Below are positions 1 to 6,564 of a stretch of 64,000 nucleotides of DNA, piece by piece; the first letter of the stretch is position 1, and the number at the start of each line of letters is the position of its first letter. The translations under genes and the position numbers were made by a program. The stretch is taken from IMG/VR virus record IMGVR_UViG_3300031787_007614, positions 1 through 64,000 of that record. The stretch is one strand, 5' to 3'. Below the pieces are notes generated by a model, which searched no databases, was not told where the DNA came from, and saw only the letters and a program-made list of their open reading frames with translations.

Positions 1-3
1 TTC

Positions 4-153
4 TATAGTCAAGCACCGAGAGATGCTCAATTTATGCGTCCTCCGCTAAGAGTGCAATAGCCGATAGCAGTTATATTAGGATCCGTTCCCGGCCGGTTGG
101 ACCCGAATAGCGTAAGCGTCCTTACACGATACCTTTATCGGTGCTTGACTATA
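4..153 (-). ncRNA. Unassigned structured RNA (A) closed by a 16-bp stem
   Basis: TATAGTCAAGCACCGA (4-19) is the perfect inverted repeat of 138-153. Internal hairpins (GTAAG/CTTAC, GGGTCC/GGATCC) and G-U pairs mostly favour the minus strand. No ORF; lies in the tRNA operon. Confidence 0.6.
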
Positions 154-183
154 AAAACTAAAAGTTCGGATTTGAAAATCAAA

Positions 184-325
184 TCCTCCCACTGCTAACT
201 ACTGCTTCCCAATTTATCGTCCATCGGCACCCGTGGTAGGGCTTGCGATGCTCATCGGCCCTGAGTTCTGGCTCAGGTGATCCTTGGGATAGGACTGCTG
301 GGCCTTGTCCTGCCCAGCATCAGGA
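184..325 (-). ncRNA. Unassigned structured RNA (B) with H-type pseudoknot
   Basis: Minus strand TGCTGGGC/GCCCAGCA stem whose loop AGGAC can pair with the following GTCCT; further hairpins CCTGAG/CTCAGG and CGATG/CATCG; GC-rich. Confidence 0.55.
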
Positions 326-331
326 AAATTA

Positions 332-530
332 GTTGCTCTGCATCCCCCGGCGGTAATTGTAGTGCATCATCTCTTGGGTTGCCCCGCAATTCTCACACAC
401 CTTCCACCCGCTTCCCGACAGGGACCGCTATCGTGTTGCTAACGGCCTTTCGGTAAGAAGACTACCACCCTTGAGAGTCACCTCACTTCTTATCCTGCGG
501 GTCACAGTATCCGCTAACCAAGCGGAACGT
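332..530 (-). ncRNA. Unassigned structured RNA (C), about 200 nt
   Basis: Minus-strand stems CCGCT/AGCGG, TAAGAAG/CTTCTTA enclosing TGAG/CTCA, and CGGT/ACCG; GC-rich, within the tRNA operon. Confidence 0.5.
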
Positions 531-535
531 CGGGG

Positions 536-595
536 AGAAGCCACGGTTGCAGGACCTAGTGCTCTTGCGAGGAAGTGTCCAGGCGATGTGGCTTC
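536..595 (-). ncRNA. Small bulged hairpin RNA (D)
   Basis: GAAGCCAC/GTGGCTTC outer stem, GCCTGG/CTAGGT middle stem, CTC-GCAA-GAG GNRA tetraloop. Confidence 0.45.
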
Positions 596-600
596 AAACT

Positions 601-693
601 TGAGGCATCATGTGGGATTCGAACCCACGCAAGAAAACCTTGATGATCATTCAAGGTTGAAGCAAACCACACTCCGTTACATCCTATGACGCC
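601..693 (-). ncRNA. Non-canonical tRNA-like RNA 1
   Basis: 8-bp acceptor GGCGTCAT/ATGATGCC, T-arm GTGGG-TTCGAAT-CCCAC, 8-bp hairpin with loop ATGATCA, no clear D-stem, ends TCA. Confidence 0.6.
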
Positions 694-700
694 ATAAACT

Positions 701-791
701 TGGTGGACAACAATGGGAATCTAACCCACTTCTTCCTCGTATGCTATTACGAAGTTTCATACCAGCCTCAGGTAATTGACACATCATGTCC
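701..791 (-). ncRNA. Non-canonical tRNA-like RNA 2
   Basis: GGACA.../...TGTCC acceptor ending ACCA, T-arm GTGGG-TTAGATT-CCCAT, hairpin CTTCGTA/TACGAGG, no canonical D or anticodon arm. Confidence 0.6.
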
Positions 792-798
792 ATAAACT

Positions 799-873
799 TG
801 GCGGTCCCAGGGGGTAACGATCCCCCTCCTCAGCAGTGACAGTGCTGTGTGCGTCCATGAACACCTTGAGACC
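799..873 (-). tRNA. tRNA-Asp(GTC)
   Basis: Full cloverleaf, anticodon loop CT-GTC-AC, G73 and encoded CCA; atypical T-loop ATCGTTA. Confidence 0.9.
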
Positions 874-879
874 AAATTA

Positions 880-1075
880 GGATAAGCTACTGGGTTCCAC
901 GCCAGCCCTTAATTGAGCAGTTACTCTGTCCATCTCATTTATTCAAAGTCTGTGTGCAGTGAGATTCTGCCTATCAGAGTCTGTAAGGGTAGTCTCCATC
1001 CTTACGCTTACGGTCTTCTGCCACCGGATCTCTATCGCTAATCAAACGCTACTTTAACGAAAGTAGTAACGGGAT
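880..1075 (-). ncRNA. Unassigned multi-hairpin RNA (G), about 195 nt
   Basis: Between tRNA-Glu and tRNA-Asp; stems CTACTTT/AAAGTAG, CGGT/ACCG, GTAAGG/CCTTAC, AGACTCTG/CAGAATCT, CTGG/CCAG; no ORF. Confidence 0.55.
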
Positions 1076-1076
1076 T

Positions 1077-1151
1077 TGGTAGAGCGTAGGGGAATCGAAC
1101 CCCTCTTACAGGCGTGAAAGGCTTGTGTCCTAACCGATAGACGAACGCTCC
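1077..1151 (-). tRNA. tRNA-Glu(TTC)
   Basis: Cloverleaf, anticodon loop CT-TTC-AC, T-loop TTCGATT, CCA end. Confidence 0.93.
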
Positions 1152-1157
1152 ATAGTT

Positions 1158-1392
1158 CACTATATGAAAACACATTAGGGAAGTTCTTGACACGCATCAC
1201 CAACTTGCATCAAGACCTCATTACAGGCCCAGTAGTTCCGCCGCCTTCCTGGAGTTTGGTGTAGCCTTATCCCTCACGCTCGATGGTGTCTCGCGCTACT
1301 CTTAGGCCCTCCTGCTTCATGGGTATCCGGCTCGAATCAGCCTTTGTTCACCCCTAACGGACTAGGTAACCCTAATGTGTTTACATATAGTG
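1158..1392 (-). ncRNA. Unassigned structured RNA (H) closed by a 23-bp stem
   Basis: 1158-1180 and 1370-1392 are inverted repeats with one mismatch; GC-rich interior with TCTTGA/TCAAGA and GTAGC/GCTAC stems. Confidence 0.6.
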
Positions 1393-1486
1393 CCCAGAAC
1401 TTAATCTGGGGCACTATACAAAATTAAATTTTTAACGAACTTCAAAGTAGTTTCGATCAACTGCCTTTGTTTTCTAACTAGTCTCT

Positions 1487-1515
1487 AGTATAGCATCTCC
1501 TGCTTTACTGGTCAA
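1487..1515 (-). promoter_or_regulatory. sigma70 promoter, RNA operon (proximal)
   Basis: TTGACC-17-TATACT with extended TG. Confidence 0.75.
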
Positions 1516-1584
1516 CTTGTTTTGTAAATGCCCCGCCTTGTTGCAGGGTCTTTACAAACTTCGCTGTTTTTCTAACTTGTGTCT

Positions 1585-1613
1585 AGTATAGCACCAATCC
1601 AATTATTGGTCTA
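1585..1613 (-). promoter_or_regulatory. sigma70 promoter, RNA operon (distal)
   Basis: TAGACC-17-TATACT with extended TG; downstream sequence duplicated relative to the proximal promoter. Confidence 0.7.
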
Positions 1614-1620
1614 CTGCCAT

Positions 1621-1650
1621 AAAAAAACCCGCCTACTTGGCGGGTTTTTT
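1621..1650. terminator. Rho-independent terminator after porin (bidirectional)
   Basis: A7-CCCGCC-loop-GGCGGG-T6. Confidence 0.85.
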
Positions 1651-1669
1651 GGTTTGTACTACTTCTGTT

Positions 1670-2560
1670 TTAGAACTGTACGACCAACCCGCCTGCTACT
1701 TGTTTGACATCAGTGGCTGCTGAGGTTCCCTCAACTGTACGATACAAAACTTGTGCATAGGTCTTTTTGCTGAAAGCATACTCAGCACCTACGTTGTAAC
1801 TCTTGATGCCATTTTCAATGCGACCATAGCTGGCCTTCACTGTGACTGGTCCACCAAGTTTGTGTGCCACGCCGACCAACTGAGCACGGTTGGTGTTGGC
1901 AGCAACGCCTTTGTTGTCGCTTGCGCTGGCAAACACAGTGGTTGCACCAAATTTAGCACGAGCAGCCAACACGTCACTGGTTTCTGCGCCAGCTTCGTAA
2001 CGAGCATAAGTCAACACAGCAGGTCCAACTGCGGCAATCACGGATGCGGCATAAGGATCAGCGGCAGTGCCAACAGCACCAGTGCTACGATCAAAGTTAG
2101 CAGAGACATTGCCAAAGTTCACAGAAGTGAAAGCGGCATTGCTCAAACGCAAACCACGCAGGTTATGCACGTCGGCAGCTGAGCTACCAATCAATGTGCC
2201 AAATGGATCATTGTCGCTGATGGCCAAGAAGTGAGTGTGAACATTGCGACCAAGATCAACGCTACCCATTTTGTGAGCAATACCCACGGTGCTTTGGCGA
2301 TCGCCAAGTCTAGTGTCAGTACCAGTGTCTGGGCTGTTGGCTTGGATGCCGGTCTCGTATGTGGCACGAGCTGTTAATCCGCCACCTAAGTTTTCAGTAG
2401 CACGAATGCCAAAGTGACTCAAGTCATTGGCCATGCCTTGCACGGTGGAAGCACCAGTTTTGGTGTTGTCAAGGTAAGTGCCAACACGACCATAGATACC
2501 AACTTGTGCGCTTGCAACACCAGCAACTGCCAGGGTCAACGCAATTAGAACTTTCTTCAT
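1670..2560 (-). CDS. Gram-negative general porin (Betaproteobacteria-type)
   Basis: Signal peptide, N-terminal V.IYGRV, S.FGIR..E.LGGGL, Y.FSKKT, C-terminal Phe. Confidence 0.9.
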   Translation of the reverse strand: MKKVLIALTLAVAGVASAQVGIYGRVGTYLDNTKTGASTVQGMANDLSHFGIRATENLGGGLTARATYETGIQANSPDTGTDTRLGDRQSTVGIAHKMGSVDLGRNVHTHFLAISDNDPFGTLIGSSAADVHNLRGLRLSNAAFTSVNFGNVSANFDRSTGAVGTAADPYAASVIAAVGPAVLTYARYEAGAETSDVLAARAKFGATTVFASASDNKGVAANTNRAQLVGVAHKLGGPVTVKASYGRIENGIKSYNVGAEYAFSKKTYAQVLYRTVEGTSAATDVKQVAGGLVVQF

Positions 2561-2608: not shown

Positions 2609-2638
2609 ATTATATAGCACAAACACTGAGAATGTCAA
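2609..2638 (-). promoter_or_regulatory. sigma70 promoter of porin
   Basis: TTGACA with downstream TATAAT-like box. Confidence 0.6.
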
Positions 2639-2640
2639 AG

Positions 2641-2666
2641 AAAATGGCTACTTTCGCAGCCATTTT
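2641..2666 (-). terminator. Terminator after tmRNA
   Basis: AAAATGGCT-GCGAAAGT-AGCCATTTT. Confidence 0.75.
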
Positions 2667-2826
2667 GGTGGTTTCTGTTACGAGGTATTTCCTACCCTAG
2701 ACGACCTTAAGCGGCCATCAAGAATTTTTCATCATTTGCAGATAAAAGTTTTGCTTGATTTACGGTCATCGCCTACCGTGCTGTCCACTCTGTTACTCTT
2801 TGCCCTGTCGAATCTAGGTCAGGCCC
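2666..2826 (-). ncRNA. ssrA: tmRNA, two-piece: piece with 5' acceptor strand and tag ORF ANDEKFLMAA* (2707-2739)
   Basis: Starts GGGCCTGA-CCTAGATTCGAC; tag reading frame ends in AA-stop. Confidence 0.92.
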
Positions 2827-2839
2827 ATCATAAAGAAAC

Positions 2840-2917
2840 TTAATCTACGCTTAATGTTGTTAACAACAAGCATAATATTGGAAAAACAATTAATAAAAAT
2901 TTTGCTAAATTTTCCAT
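2840..2917 (-). CDS. 25-aa hydrophobic micropeptide in tmRNA intervening segment
   Basis: MENLAKFLLIVFPILCLLLTTLSVD*; start is 1 nt after the upstream micro-ORF stop. Confidence 0.45.
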   Translation of the reverse strand: MENLAKFLLIVFPILCLLLTTLSVD

Positions 2918-2918
2918 A

Positions 2919-3029
2919 TTACCATAACTCACAGTTTTTTATTTTCTCTTCGTCCAATGTGGTATCACGTGTAAAATAAAATACACCAAACACTAACCAA
3001 AATAACAAAAATAAAACATAACCTATCAT
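2919..3029 (-). CDS. 36-aa single-TM micropeptide in tmRNA intervening segment
   Basis: MIGYVLFLLFWLVFGVFYFTRDTTLDEEKIKNCELW*; RBS AAGGAAG just upstream. Confidence 0.55.
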   Translation of the reverse strand: MIGYVLFLLFWLVFGVFYFTRDTTLDEEKIKNCELW

Positions 3030-3041
3030 TAAACTTCCTTA

Positions 3042-3108
3042 TGGTGGACCTGGGGGGATTCGCACCCCCGTCCAGAACACTTTTCTCTCGGCTTCATACA
3101 GCAATAAC
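3042..3108 (-). ncRNA. ssrA: tmRNA, two-piece: piece with T-arm and ACCA end (transcribed first)
   Basis: GGAC-GGGGG-TGCGAAT-CCCCC-CAGGTCC-ACCA; pairs with GGGCCTG giving the G3-U70 Ala identity. Confidence 0.92.
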
Positions 3109-3112
3109 TCGC

Positions 3113-3141
3113 AGTATATATTTATTCTTTGGGCTTGTCAA
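3113..3141 (-). promoter_or_regulatory. sigma70 promoter of tmRNA
   Basis: TTGACA-17-TATACT. Confidence 0.8.
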
Positions 3142-4548: not shown

Positions 4549-5313
4549 TCAACGGTCTTTGTCAGTTCTTACCAATTGAATTAAGCGGTATCCAGGATCA
4601 AATTCCCACCATTTTTTGCCAAACTGTGGATCTGCGGCAGCGGCGTGATGATTGTTGTGCCAGCCCTCTCCACCAGTCAAATATCCTACCAGCAGGTTAT
4701 TTGAACTTTGATCACGTGTGTCAAAATTTCTATATCCTGATGGACTGTGAGTGAGAGAGTTGGTCAGTGAACTGGCATGTTGCAACAATAGTGACGGAAC
4801 CAAATAAGCATACACTACTGCATAAGGATCTATCATGTAAACTGCCACCCCGACCAAGATAGTGTACAACCAATGATTGTAGTACATGTGCATGTGAAAT
4901 TTGGATTTCACAATCTCTGGAGCATAACTTAATTTTGGAGTAGCAGGTGTGAGTCTAAATTGCACGGCTAGATAACCGTATACCGCAGGTGAGTGCGGAT
5001 CATCTTTTGTGTCAGAGTGTCTATGATGCGCTCGATGTATTGCTACCCAATACAACATTGGTAAAGTTGTGCCAGGAATAGCAATCAATGTTCCTAGATA
5101 TTCAAACCATTTTGGTGCTTGAAAAGAACGATGGGTGATCAGCCGATGAACTGTTACAGTTCCGACTACCATCTTGATATAGTAGACCAACAGACATATT
5201 GCCCACTGCCATGCTTCACTGTTGAAGATAAAGTAGACCAGGATCACATGTAGACAGGCACTGTATGCAATCATTTCGTTGTGCGAAGGCACAAACCAGT
5301 TTTTCTTTTTCAT
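4549..5313 (-). CDS. Membrane fatty-acid (delta-9-type) desaturase
   Basis: Three His boxes HRLITH, HRAHH, WHNNHH; TM segments; WWEFD. Confidence 0.92.
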   Translation of the reverse strand: MKKKNWFVPSHNEMIAYSACLHVILVYFIFNSEAWQWAICLLVYYIKMVVGTVTVHRLITHRSFQAPKWFEYLGTLIAIPGTTLPMLYWVAIHRAHHRHSDTKDDPHSPAVYGYLAVQFRLTPATPKLSYAPEIVKSKFHMHMYYNHWLYTILVGVAVYMIDPYAVVYAYLVPSLLLQHASSLTNSLTHSPSGYRNFDTRDQSSNNLLVGYLTGGEGWHNNHHAAAADPQFGKKWWEFDPGYRLIQLVRTDKDR

Positions 5314-5480: not shown

Positions 5481-5773
5481 AGCCTGGAATCATAAGTGAA
5501 GGCAGCAAGATATCGCATGCTGGCACGGCTGGGAATGTGCTGATTACAGAACCGTTGGTATGCCGCACGCCAACGCTTTTGGACAGGTGCTGGCGCATGG
5601 CAAGCAAGATAATGCAAGTGGCCAAATCTGCGCCCAATGCTGATGTGATTGGGCTTCCAGCCTGCAGGATACCATTTGTCGCGAGTTTGCCAATTGTAGT
5701 TTACCCAGACACCCATTCGGCGTTCTTGCATGATATACTTTTTAGATATATCTTGTGGTCTAAATCGGTTCAT
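5477..5773 (-). CDS. Hypothetical protein
   Basis: ATGA overlaps with neighbours. Confidence 0.6.
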   Translation of the reverse strand: MNRFRPQDISKKYIMQERRMGVWVNYNWQTRDKWYPAGWKPNHISIGRRFGHLHYLACHAPAPVQKRWRAAYQRFCNQHIPSRASMRYLAAFTYDSRL

Positions 5774-6564
5774 TTTTGCATCATCAGCGCATTGAAGTTT
5801 GCAGGAACAACAATTGTTTGCACACGACCGTTCTTGATACCTTCTGAGATATTCATCATAGCCTGCGCTTGCATGTAAGCAATTGACTGAGCACCTTGAT
5901 TACTCAATGCTTGCATACGTTCTGCTTCCATCTTAGCAGTCTTAACTTCAACTTCTTTTTGTTTCAATTCATTCTTGGCACGAACCAACTCATTTGCACT
6001 CGCAACCACAGAATCTGCAGGTACAATATTCCGAATCAACACTTGACCAACAACCAAACTACCATCAAGTTTTTCATCAGCCAAACTCTTTTGAATTTGT
6101 TCTTTAATTGCTTGTTCCATCACTTGGCGATTATCAGCCATGTCTAGTGCCTCGTACTTTCGGGCTTCTTTGTAGATGGCATTACGAGTGGTTTGAACCA
6201 TATAGTTGTACATCAAGTAGATGTCGCCGTTGTGCCGAGCATGGAATGCTTGACTCTTTTGGCTATACAACTCGGCTACCTGTGCTTGATTGATGTTATA
6301 GATAACCACTGCATCAAAGTCTTTCATTGTTGAGTTATCTTTAGCAACAGGTGTCATGTCCTCCAGTTTGACATTAACGTCCTTGATTGGGAATGTAAGA
6401 ACATCACCCCAAAAGGTTTGATTAAACGAGCCAGGCATTAATTCACCTTGCTGGACTTGTTTATCAAAGCCAACACGTACACCAACTTCACCTGTTTCGA
6501 TACGAGTACAACCTGTTGCCAGCACAGCCGCGGCAAGAACGGAGAGAGTCAAAATACGTTTCAT
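5770..6564 (-). CDS. SPFH/band-7 (prohibitin-like) lipoprotein
   Basis: Lipobox LATGC, IETGEVGV, C-terminal coiled coil. Confidence 0.88.
   Translation of the reverse strand: MKRILTLSVLAAAVLATGCTRIETGEVGVRVGFDKQVQQGELMPGSFNQTFWGDVLTFPIKDVNVKLEDMTPVAKDNSTMKDFDAVVIYNINQAQVAELYSQKSQAFHARHNGDIYLMYNYMVQTTRNAIYKEARKYEALDMADNRQVMEQAIKEQIQKSLADEKLDGSLVVGQVLIRNIVPADSVVASANELVRAKNELKQKEVEVKTAKMEAERMQALSNQGAQSIAYMQAQAMMNISEGIKNGRVQTIVVPANFNALMMQK

What the first reader, a model, noticed from the sequence alone, without database searches (positions are those of the whole stretch)
4..153. RNA A: 150-nt unit clamped by a perfect 16-bp terminal stem
Seen: a perfect terminal inverted repeat, extendable to 19 bp with one G-U on the minus strand, encloses several hairpins and a duplicated AGGACGC. 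Inference: either a 6S- or Y-RNA-like closed RNA, or a unit excised by RNase III cleavage of the stem.
Basis: partly seen in the sequence, partly recalled or inferred. Interest (0 to 1): 0.6.

Follow-up and report, generated by a model that had tools for sequence, protein, structure and literature searches.

The report
Novel structured RNA in phage tRNA-island
The 150-base unit is a real gene for a compactly folded RNA of a family that matches nothing in the RNA-family database; it sits among the tRNA genes of large uncultured water phages, its fold is strongly supported by evolution, and its job is still unknown.

Summary
The inverted repeat is real and not chance. The unit is a single-copy RNA gene on the MINUS strand, the strand of all 30 tRNAs and the tmRNA of this 364-kb circularly assembled phage. 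It straddles the contig junction.

Pattern scans and a covariance model found over 200 related contigs and about 147 distinct sequences. Almost all are phage tRNA islands from metagenomes. None was found in 50,697 GenBank phage records. The only true match among 185,579 species genomes is a phage-like MAG contig.

Covariation supports this fold:
- a 19-24 bp terminal helix P1 (median 21);
- hairpins P2, P3 and P4;
- a short helix P5;
- a 4-bp pseudoknot between the P3 loop and the strand before P4.

92-95% of pair cells are paired, against 69-71% in shuffles. G-U to A-C is 205:18.

Rfam gives no hit, even at E up to 10. It is not 6S, YrlA, a tRNA, GOLLD, T4 rnaC/rnaD or a MITE. The phage encodes no Ro, RtcB, RNase III, dsRBD or reverse transcriptase.

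P1 usually ends 0-4 nt before the next tRNA. I infer release by tRNA-processing enzymes, with host RNase III possible, and a trans-acting role through the conserved core. The function is unknown.

The parts
1..159 (-). Whole RNA A unit as matched by the family covariance model (model positions 1-157). P1 can extend 3-4 bp further across the circular junction, into genome 364273-364277.
   Evidence: cmsearch with R1: 144.8 bits, E 3e-34, full length. Only copy in the genome.
138..156 (-). P1 5' arm (RNA positions 4-22)
   Evidence: P1 is 19-24 bp (median 21) in all 64 distinct members examined. 17-18 of its 19 pairs show compensatory changes.
1..19 (-). P1 3' arm (RNA positions 141-159)
   Evidence: In 24 of 25 close relatives one pair is U-G on this strand, which would be C-A on the + strand.
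128..137 (-). J1/2 joiner with the invariant GGUA
   Evidence: G27 G28 U29 A30 are invariant in 64 sequences.
110..127 (-). P2 hairpin: 7 bp plus a GACG-type tetraloop; it holds the conserved GGACGC
   Evidence: 6 of 7 pairs have changes on both sides; 97% of cells are paired.
79..104 (-). P3 hairpin: a 6-bp lower stem with an invariant G-U, an internal loop and a 2-bp upper stem. Its loop forms the pseudoknot.
   Evidence: 99.5-100% paired; 3 pairs covary and 2-3 are invariant.
90..93 (-). Pseudoknot 5' strand (P3 loop, GCCG in the window)
   Evidence: Mutual information scan. 100% paired in three alignments, with GC/CG/UA and GC/AU swaps at the two variable pairs.
60..63 (-). Pseudoknot 3' strand (CGGC in the window)
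   Evidence: Same as the 5' strand. A further U-A type occurs in L143.
66..70 (-). P5 5' strand (CUGCU), directly after the conserved AUAA joiner
   Evidence: RNAduplex on all variants. Compensatory variants in L112, L132 and L136. The three core pairs are about 88-90% paired. Support is moderate.
23..27 (-). P5 3' strand (AGCAU)
35..56 (-). P4 hairpin: a 3-bp base, an internal loop, and an apical stem whose loop holds a conserved AGC
   Evidence: The 3 base pairs all covary and are 98-100% paired. The apical stem is 65-72% paired in the model-fitted alignments.

Best explanation
What it is (shown). RNA A is one member of a family of about 155-nt structured non-coding RNAs that matches no Rfam 15 family. 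The gene lies on the tRNA strand, inside the tRNA/tmRNA (and here also GOLLD) islands of uncultured, mostly large, aquatic phages. The RNA folds into a terminal helix P1 of about 21 bp. P1 closes a junction carrying hairpins P2 and P3 and a short helix P5. P5 in turn encloses hairpin P4. The P3 loop pairs with the strand between P5 and P4, forming a 4-bp pseudoknot. About 25 unpaired junction nucleotides are near-invariant.

How it is made (inferred). It is transcribed with the tRNAs, or in some phages from a promoter-like motif placed just before P1. It is then freed like a tRNA-array unit. RNase P cutting at the 5' end of the next tRNA would leave the 3' end flush with P1. The two-turn P1 would clamp both ends against exonucleases. 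P1 is also the right size to be trimmed by host RNase III.

What it does (guess). The mature RNA acts in trans through its conserved pseudoknotted core, by binding a protein, an RNA (tRNA) or a small ligand during the phage's takeover of translation and tRNA metabolism. The partner is unknown.
For: Family and fold:
- 41, 95 and more than 118 viral contigs were found by three different patterns.
- More than 120 metagenome contigs were found, and 79 of 80 scored 68-168 bits with model R1.
- There are about 147 distinct cores.
- Pair counts on three alignments give 92.4%, 94.3% and 95.2% of cells paired. Shuffles give 68.6-71.1% (0 of 500 reach the observed value) and slid partners give 35-43%. 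35 to 39 of 47-49 pairs change on both sides.
- The pseudoknot came from a blind mutual-information scan and is 100% paired.

Strand:
- G-U to A-C is 205:18 on A3 and 112:20 on A4.
- All ARAGORN tRNAs in the 64 loci lie on the same strand; none lies opposite.

Gene-like copy number: one copy in the window's genome and one in each of five other 92-99% complete genomes of 320-349 kb.

Processing context:
- The next tRNA starts -6 to +9 nt after P1 in 40 of 57 loci; the mode is +1.
- The previous tRNA's CCA lies -6 to +5 nt before P1 in 15 of 47 loci. Other members follow another RNA's 3' end or a promoter-like AGUGUGUUU..AAUAU motif.
- P1 is 19-24 bp in every member despite unrelated sequences.

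Expression (weak): contigs from metatranscriptome libraries of two studies carry relatives of the whole unit. Coverage along the island is very uneven.

No known family: zero Rfam hits at E up to 10.
Against: - No experiment and no read-level data exist. The RNA-library evidence is assembled contigs only. It shows no ends and no strand, and DNA carry-over cannot be excluded.
- In the window itself no tRNA follows the unit. It lies tail-to-tail with a + strand ketoacyl-synthase-like gene. RNase P therefore cannot set its 3' end here.
- A weak hairpin plus U-rich run lies just upstream of the unit on the minus strand (window 168-186). Read-through from the tRNA operon is therefore unproven for this copy.
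- The phage has no RNase III or dsRBD gene, so any RNase III step would depend on the host.
- Much of the apparent invariance of CUAUUCGGG and UCCUnAnAUAAC was imposed by the search patterns. Only the first scan, which used the P1 arm alone, shows it independently, and only within one subfamily.
- P5 and the apical part of P4 are less well supported (62-72% paired in the model-fitted alignments).
- Nothing points to a specific partner.
Confidence: 0.6

Rival explanations
1. Pure processing or spacer element. The unit exists only to present a two-turn dsRNA helix to host RNase III, or to act as an exonuclease block, so that the untranslated tRNA polycistron is cut into pieces. This would resemble the stems flanking 16S and 23S rRNA. 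The interior would have no function of its own.
For: P1 is always 19-24 bp whatever its sequence. It is placed flush between tRNAs. The outer half of P1 is more variable than the inner half: 25 versus 11 distinct arm sequences.
Against: About 25 unpaired junction positions are near-invariant, and a covarying pseudoknot plus three hairpins is maintained over more than 100 distinct sequences. That is far more than a cleavage stem needs. There is only one unit per genome, among about 30 tRNAs. In the window it sits at the end of the array, where nothing needs separating.
Confidence: 0.1
2. Highly derived tRNA or tRNA mimic. On this view it is a giant cloverleaf: P1 = acceptor, P2 = D arm, P3 = anticodon arm, P4 = T arm. 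It would act as a decoy or competitor for host enzymes or defence nucleases that target tRNAs, or as a substrate for tRNA enzymes.
For: It has the same order of helices as a cloverleaf and the same genomic niche and strand as tRNAs. It is spaced in the arrays like a tRNA. The P2 stem-loop shares GUGU plus a 9-nt string with the D arm of the neighbouring phage tRNA-Asp. Phage tRNA sets are thought to counter tRNA-cleaving defences (own knowledge).
Against: The Rfam tRNA model and ARAGORN do not call it, even at E up to 10. It has no T-loop consensus, no 7-nt anticodon-type loop with U33 and no 3' CCA. The acceptor-like helix is three times too long. The pseudoknot has no tRNA counterpart. The 9-mer match has roughly a 4% chance per tRNA compared, so it is not significant over 30 tRNAs.
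Confidence: 0.12
3. Catalytic or ligand-sensing RNA. It would be a self-cleaving or tRNA-processing ribozyme, or an aptamer whose P1 stability controls maturation of the tRNA that starts 1-2 nt downstream.
For: Its complexity is of the riboswitch or ribozyme class: a pseudoknot, conserved junction nucleotides and covarying stems. P1's 3' strand abuts the next tRNA. HDV-like theta ribozymes next to phage tRNAs set a precedent (PMC10879173, title and abstract as listed).
Against: No known ribozyme or riboswitch family matches. 17 of 57 members, and the window's copy, have no tRNA close downstream. No candidate cleavage site or ligand is indicated.
Confidence: 0.1
4. Y-RNA-like (YrlA) or 6S-like regulatory RNA. 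The closed stem would bind Ro/Rsr, or the RNA would mimic an open promoter.
For: There is a long stem formed by the 5' and 3' ends, with a structured module inside. The size is similar to bacterial Y RNAs.
Against: There are no Rfam hits of any kind on window 1-170. The genome has no TROVE or RtcB gene. It has no T-arm/D-arm consensus and no GGUCCGA-like motif in the stem; these YrlA features are taken from PMC4201824. It has no large single-stranded central bubble and no distal closing stem as in 6S.
Confidence: 0.03
5. DNA-level element. This could be a MITE or other mobile palindrome, a recombination or packaging site, or an artefact of the contig end.
For: It has a perfect terminal inverted repeat. 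It lies exactly at the contig end, inside the 127-nt terminal duplication.
Against: There is one copy per genome in six genomes and no target-site duplication. The strand asymmetry of G-U over A-C is strong. Compensatory changes preserve RNA pairs, including a pseudoknot. The same unit lies internally in hundreds of other contigs, so it is not an end artefact.
Confidence: 0.01
6. Template or scaffold RNA of a reverse-transcriptase system: a retron msr/msd with a1/a2 repeats, or a UG27-type ncRNA unit of about 150 nt with a pseudoknot.
For: It has a terminal inverted repeat like retron a1/a2. The unit size and the pseudoknot recall the phage UG27 ncRNA units described in bioRxiv 10.64898/2026.09.22.753630.
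Against: There is no RVT_1 domain anywhere in the complete 364-kb genome. It is a single copy, not an array. It is flanked by tRNAs, not by an RT gene.
Confidence: 0.01

Closest known systems
GOLLD and ROOL RNAs (large ornate phage/prophage RNAs, often near tRNA islands)
   Same: They are phage-encoded, elaborately folded RNAs with pseudoknots. They lie in tRNA islands and have no known partner or function (10.1101/2024.12.08.627333). A GOLLD gene lies in the very same island of this genome (204 bits). Another lies 3.6 kb from RNA A in L067.
   Different: RNA A is 4-5 times smaller. It has no sequence or model similarity to them. It occurs without GOLLD in five other complete genomes. Nothing is known about oligomerisation.
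Phage T4 species 1 and 2 RNAs (rnaC, rnaD)
   Same: They are small stable RNAs of about 120-140 nt encoded at the end of a phage tRNA cluster on the tRNA strand (annotation). That they are co-processed with the tRNAs and have no known function rests on my own knowledge.
   Different: Model R1 finds nothing in the T4 locus. rnaC folds with a tRNA-type T arm and lacks a 21-bp terminal helix. rnaD is barely structured. They are analogues, not homologues.
Bacterial Y RNAs (YrlA/Yrn1)
   Same: The 5' and 3' ends pair in a long stem that closes a multi-hairpin module. The size is similar. Some are phage-encoded (PMC4201824).
   Different: RNA A has no neighbouring Ro/TROVE gene, no T-arm/D-arm mimicry, no Ro-binding motif in the stem and no Rfam match.
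RNase III processing stems of rRNA operons and T7 early transcripts
   Same: A helix of about two turns is formed by sequences flanking a stable RNA inside an untranslated polycistron (own knowledge). P1 is 19-24 bp.
   Different: Cleavage is untested. Here RNase P at the adjacent tRNA can already set the 3' end. P1 is nearly perfect, without the internal loops typical of T7 sites.
Theta (HDV-like) ribozymes next to phage tRNAs
   Same: They are structured RNAs with a pseudoknot placed directly beside tRNA genes in uncultured phages, and they are linked to tRNA end formation (PMC10879173).
   Different: RNA A has no HDV-like nested double pseudoknot and no Rfam ribozyme match. It is twice the size. 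Many copies are not adjacent to the 3' end of a tRNA.

Membership tests
YrlA / bacterial Y RNA | Match to the curated covariance model (Rfam) | tested here: not met
   cmscan of window 1-170 against all 4227 Rfam 15 families gave 0 matches at E up to 10. Nothing was found at 1-160 in the 1-1700 scan either.
YrlA / bacterial Y RNA | Encoded next to, or in a genome with, a Ro60/Rsr (TROVE) gene | tested here: not met
   PF05731 is absent from the complete 364-kb genome; the positive controls rang. RtcB is also absent.
YrlA / bacterial Y RNA | Conserved T-arm-like and D-arm-like stem-loops, and a GGUCCGA-like Ro-binding motif in the terminal stem (PMC4201824) | tested here: not met
   Family consensus: no T-loop consensus is present. 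P1 sequences are AAGCAYCGA-type or AGUGUUAUC-type, and no GGUCCGA lies in the stem.
6S RNA | Rfam 6S models; a long helix interrupted by a large single-stranded central bubble and closed by a distal stem-loop | tested here: not met
   There is no Rfam hit. The interior is a pseudoknotted multi-helix junction supported by covariation.
tRNA / tRNA-like | Cloverleaf recognised by the tRNA covariance model or by ARAGORN; T loop; 7-nt anticodon loop; 3' CCA | tested here: not met
   ARAGORN and Rfam RF00005 do not call it. The helix order resembles a cloverleaf, but the sizes and loops do not.
MITE / mobile palindromic element | Many dispersed copies per genome with terminal inverted repeats and target-site duplications | tested here: not met
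   There is one copy in the window's genome and one in each of five other near-complete genomes. No TSD is seen. The flanks are tRNAs.
GOLLD RNA | Match to RF02032 | tested here: not met
   RF02032 matches genome 362284-362748, not the unit. RNA A occurs in five genomes without GOLLD.
T4 rnaC / rnaD | Homology to the T4 species 1 and 2 RNAs | tested here: not met
   R1 gave no hit in the T4 tRNA-region locus L108. The folds differ.
RNase III substrate | Uninterrupted dsRNA of about two helical turns (about 20 bp or more) | tested here: met
   P1 is 19-24 bp, median 21, in 64 of 64 members. In the window it is 19 bp, or 23 bp across the junction.
RNase III substrate | Actual staggered cleavage leaving 2-nt 3' overhangs | not testable with these tools
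   Only assembled contigs of RNA libraries were available, so no ends can be read.
Retron / UG27-type RT-associated ncRNA | Adjacent or co-encoded reverse transcriptase | tested here: not met
   PF00078 is absent from the complete genome; the controls rang.
Known self-cleaving ribozymes and riboswitches | Match to any Rfam ribozyme or riboswitch model | tested here: not met
   Activity itself was not testable.

The most novel reading that the evidence does not exclude
RNA A is a new functional RNA class with its own biochemical activity directed at the phage's tRNA supply. It could be a small ribozyme, or a ligand- or tRNA-sensing aptamer whose P1 helix gates maturation of the tRNA that begins 1-2 nt downstream. 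Alternatively it could be a self-assembling RNA like GOLLD and ROOL. On any of these readings it would be more than a passive stable RNA.
Probability: 0.12. Interest if true: 0.85.

Novelty: new variant of a known kind. Interest (0 to 1): 0.62.

Why it matters
Orphan structured RNAs in phage tRNA islands (GOLLD, ROOL, and T4 species 1 and 2 RNA since the 1970s) remain unexplained. This family adds a small member that can be worked on:
- It is about 155 nt long.
- Its fold is defined by covariation, pseudoknot included.
- It is single-copy and phage-specific.
- It is abundant in freshwater metagenomes.

Its size suits chemical probing, crystallography or cryo-EM, and pull-downs. If its partner is found, that could show what large phages do with their private tRNA and translation toolkits beyond supplying codons. 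It could also show how long untranslated tRNA polycistrons are processed.

The covariance model can be used at once to annotate hundreds of phage contigs in which this stretch is currently blank.

Tried and rejected
Searches for a known family or partner that found nothing:
- Rfam at gathering and at E up to 10, on 64 kb, on 1.7 kb and on 170 nt: nothing at the unit.
- Pfam searches of the whole genome for TROVE, RtcB, dsrm, the RNase III domain and RVT_1: all absent, with positive controls ringing. One search was a tool failure and was repeated.
- Pfam on ten neighbouring ORFs gave porin, fatty-acid desaturase, SPFH, an AAA_33 kinase-like protein and a ketoacyl synthase. None bears on RNA.

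Comparisons with candidate relatives:
- T4 rnaC and rnaD were fetched, folded and searched with R1; they are unrelated.
- GOLLD co-occurs in the window's genome and in L067 but not in five other carriers.
- A resemblance of the strand AUAAC..CGGCUU to the RNase P P4/CR-V region and to TPP or twister motifs was considered by eye only. It was dropped because no model matches.

Searches in public collections:
- blastn of two family representatives against 50,697 GenBank phage records: no match, so no cultured carrier is known.
- Genome-collection scan: one true hit, on a phage-like MAG contig, and one chance hit in a coding region.
- The third viral scan pattern was loose and returned many chance hits in coding DNA. 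These were discarded by eye and by the model.

Structure analysis that needed correction:
- My first P5 register failed on the MAFFT alignment (35% paired). It was redone with RNAduplex and with model-fitted alignments.

Expression and literature:
- Metatranscriptome contigs were laid but cannot give ends, strand or level.
- Literature searches found no description of this RNA. The IMG/VR catalogue of 8,495 candidate RNAs (PMC10690425) may list part of it anonymously. Its supplementary files are not held, so this could not be checked.

No complex prediction or structure job was run, because no protein partner is proposed.

Full report
OBSERVATION. Window 1-19 and 138-156 form a 19-nt inverted repeat that is 95% complementary, with 118 nt between the arms. 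The 16-mer at 4-19 recurs exactly, inverted, at 138-153, where 0.41 near-matches are expected by chance. The one mismatch is a G-U on the minus strand. Both strands fold much better than shuffled controls, with z -4.7 for + and -5.35 for -.

The window is the start of a 364,404-bp IMG/VR phage record whose first 127 nt are repeated at its end. That is an assembly overlap of a circular or circularly permuted genome. The unit therefore straddles an arbitrary break and exists once. Read across the junction, P1 reaches 23 bp.

SURROUNDINGS. Window 1-1670 has no ORF of 80 aa or more. ARAGORN finds 30 tRNAs and a permuted tmRNA in the genome. All are on the minus strand, in one island that runs from 355,769 across the junction to window 4,090.

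Rfam also finds a GOLLD RNA in that island, at genome 362,284-362,748 (204 bits). Just upstream of window position 1, a + strand ketoacyl-synthase-like ORF ends; its stop codon is the complement of the last P1 extension pair. Other neighbours are a porin, a fatty-acid desaturase and an SPFH protein. None bears on RNA.

RELATIVES. A scan of IMG/VR for the 16-mer arm returned 41 contigs, and 38 of them align over the entire unit at 74-100% identity. A second scan used only interior motifs and gave 95 contigs with 71 distinct units. Their P1 sequences are unrelated to the window's, yet still form a long helix. A third scan gave more than 118 contigs, with further variants among many chance hits.

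79 of the 80 fetched loci scored 68-168 bits with covariance model R1. Altogether there are about 147 distinct cores.

The family is essentially phage-only:
- Of 185,579 species genomes, only one true hit appeared. It is on a MAG contig carrying the same tRNA/tmRNA island.
- None of 50,697 GenBank phage records matches by blastn.
- Each of six near-complete genomes of 320-364 kb has exactly one copy.

It is not a MITE, and the interior is conserved.

STRUCTURE. RNAalifold on 25 close relatives already gave P1-P4, with 11 compensatory pairs. A blind mutual-information scan then revealed a long-range pairing between the P3 loop and the strand ahead of P4. Variants showed a short helix P5, UGC(N) with (N')GCA, that encloses this strand and P4.

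Pair counts on three alignments are as follows. All have 0 of 500 shuffles reaching the observed percentage paired.

| Alignment | Source | Cells paired | Shuffled mean | Slid partners | Pairs changed on both sides |
|---|---|---|---|---|---|
| A3 | MAFFT, 64 sequences | 92.4% | 68.6% | 35-43% | 35 of 49 |
| A4 | model-fitted, 38 sequences | 94.3% | 68.8% | 36-42% | 39 of 47 |
| A5 | independent metagenome set, 79 sequences | 95.2% | 71.1% | 37-40% | 37 of 47 |

Per helix:
- P1: 17-18 of 19 pairs covary, and about 98% of cells are paired.
- P2: 6 of 7 pairs covary.
- P3: 99.5-100% paired, with an invariant G-U.
- Pseudoknot: 100% paired, with GC/CG/UA and GC/AU swaps.
- P4 base: all 3 pairs covary.
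- P5 core: about 88-90% paired, with a few compensatory cases. I call P5 probable.

P1 is 19-24 bp (median 21) in all 64 distinct units measured, and the units are 151-167 nt long. About 25 unpaired positions are near-invariant. They include GGUA in J1/2, UAUUC before P3, AUAA before P5, AGC in the P4 loop and AAU after P4.

Caveat: two of these motifs were part of my search patterns. Their conservation is independent only in the set retrieved by the P1 arm.

STRAND. G-U pairs outnumber A-C by 205:18 on A3 and by 112:20 on A4. In 64 loci every tRNA lies on the strand of the unit and none on the other. The RNA is the minus strand of the window.

CONTEXT AND MATURATION (inference).
- The next tRNA begins -6 to +9 nt after the last P1 pair in 40 of 57 loci, most often at +1.
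- The preceding tRNA's CCA lies -6 to +5 nt before P1 in 15 of 47 loci. In six of these it is part of P1.
- Other members follow the 3' end of another unknown RNA, or a promoter-like AGUGUGUUU..AAUAU motif that ends a few nt before P1.

The unit therefore behaves like one more module of the tRNA array. RNase P cleavage of the downstream tRNA would leave its 3' end flush with P1. P1 would protect both ends.

A near-perfect helix of two turns is also the canonical RNase III substrate (own knowledge). The phage has no RNase III or dsRBD gene.

The outer half of P1 varies more freely than the inner half: 25 versus 11 distinct arm sequences. This is compatible with an outer handle and an inner part that belongs to the mature RNA, but the difference is modest.

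In the window itself no tRNA follows, and a weak hairpin plus U-run precedes the unit (window 168-186). For this copy, the 3' end must be set otherwise, and transcription is unproven.

Metatranscriptome contigs from two studies carry relatives of the whole unit. One example is a 227-nt contig covering window 4-163 with 16 differences. Coverage along the island is very uneven, as expected for RNA. Contigs give no ends or strand, and DNA carry-over cannot be excluded.

COMPARISON WITH KNOWN FAMILIES. Nothing in Rfam 15 matches, even at E up to 10 on a 170-nt query.
- YrlA/Y RNA: no model match, no TROVE or RtcB gene, no T-arm/D-arm consensus and no Ro-binding motif in the stem.
- 6S: the wrong architecture.
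- tRNA: not called. The helix order recalls a cloverleaf, and P2 shares a 9-mer with the D arm of the neighbouring tRNA-Asp, which is not significant over 30 tRNAs.
- T4 rnaC/rnaD: the closest analogues in lifestyle, but R1 does not hit them and their folds differ.
- GOLLD/ROOL: the same niche, and GOLLD is even in the same island. RNA A is unrelated to them and occurs without GOLLD in five genomes.
- Retron or UG27-type RT RNAs: there is no RT in the genome.

VERDICT.

What is there is a well-supported family of pseudoknotted RNAs of about 155 nt, absent from Rfam 15, specific to phage tRNA islands. I put about 0.95 on it being a genuine structured minus-strand RNA gene. I put about 0.6 on the array-unit maturation model. 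I put well under 0.5 on any particular function. My best guess is a trans-acting binder in tRNA or translation takeover.

Noticed in passing
genome 362284-362748 (minus), outside the window; L167:7785-8249: A GOLLD RNA (RF02032, 204 bits, full model) with a tRNA embedded in it (L167 8116-8186). It lies in the same RNA island, about 1.9 kb from RNA A across the ketoacyl-synthase gene. The ORF-poor stretch at genome 362778-363200 may be its 5' half.
   Followed up: partly
window 2616-3134 (-): A permuted (two-piece) tmRNA with tag ANDEKFLMAA. Relatives match the beta-proteobacterial tmRNA model, and a Porin_4 gene lies at window 1670-2560. Both suggest a betaproteobacterial host.
   Followed up: partly
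window 186-322, 334-600, about 900-1070 and about 1173-1383 (-): Further ORF-free stretches with no Rfam match recur next to RNA A in relatives. One is the element ending ...CCGCCGGGGGAUGCAGAGCA at window 334-365. These stretches carry the highest contig depth in metatranscriptome libraries (window 400-513, 913-1083, 1198-1368). They are probably more unknown stable RNAs.
   Followed up: no
window 204-298: An 80.6% blastn match to an unannotated stretch of Bordetella phage vB_BbrM_PHB04 (47164-47261). It is the only part of the 1.7-kb RNA region, apart from tRNAs, that is shared with a cultured phage.
   Followed up: no
window 604-692 (-): A weak tRNA-like match (20 bits, below gathering) with a good T arm. 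It may be an aberrant or intron-containing tRNA. ARAGORN with introns also proposes a tRNA-Val with a 392-nt intron at genome 137583-138064, outside the window.
   Followed up: no
window 1-127 = genome 364278-364404: The record's 'direct terminal repeat' is a 127-nt overlap, typical of a k-mer assembly of a circular molecule. It is not a biological terminal repeat, and it cuts RNA A in two in the second copy.
   Followed up: yes
L186:1087-1242 and L186:3669-3825: One 5.5-kb metagenome contig carries two full-length family members 2.4 kb apart. It is the only case of more than one copy seen.
   Followed up: no
upstream of P1 in L006, L008, L040, L050, L066, L074, L079, L091 and others: A conserved motif (C)AGUGUGUUU-N-AAUAU(G) ends 1-8 nt before P1. 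It looks like a phage-specific promoter with a -10-like box, and it would make RNA A the first RNA of a transcript in those phages.
   Followed up: partly
window 110-127 versus tRNA-Asp at window 799-873 (-): P2 of RNA A in many members shares GUGU plus the 9-mer AUGGACGCA with the D arm of the phage tRNA-Asp, which usually follows it. This may be a trace of tRNA ancestry or may be chance.
   Followed up: partly
window 4549-5313, 5770-6564; L002:597-1498: Auxiliary metabolic-looking genes are interleaved with the RNA island: a fatty-acid desaturase, an SPFH/Band 7 protein and a short ketoacyl-synthase-like protein on the opposite strand.
   Followed up: no
L109 (NZ_JBBAKG010000090.1): A 23-kb contig binned into a Haliscomenobacter MAG carries the same tRNA-Met/Arg, permuted tmRNA, tRNA-Glu, RNA A and tRNA-Asp island. 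It is most likely a phage contig mis-binned or a host hint.
   Followed up: partly
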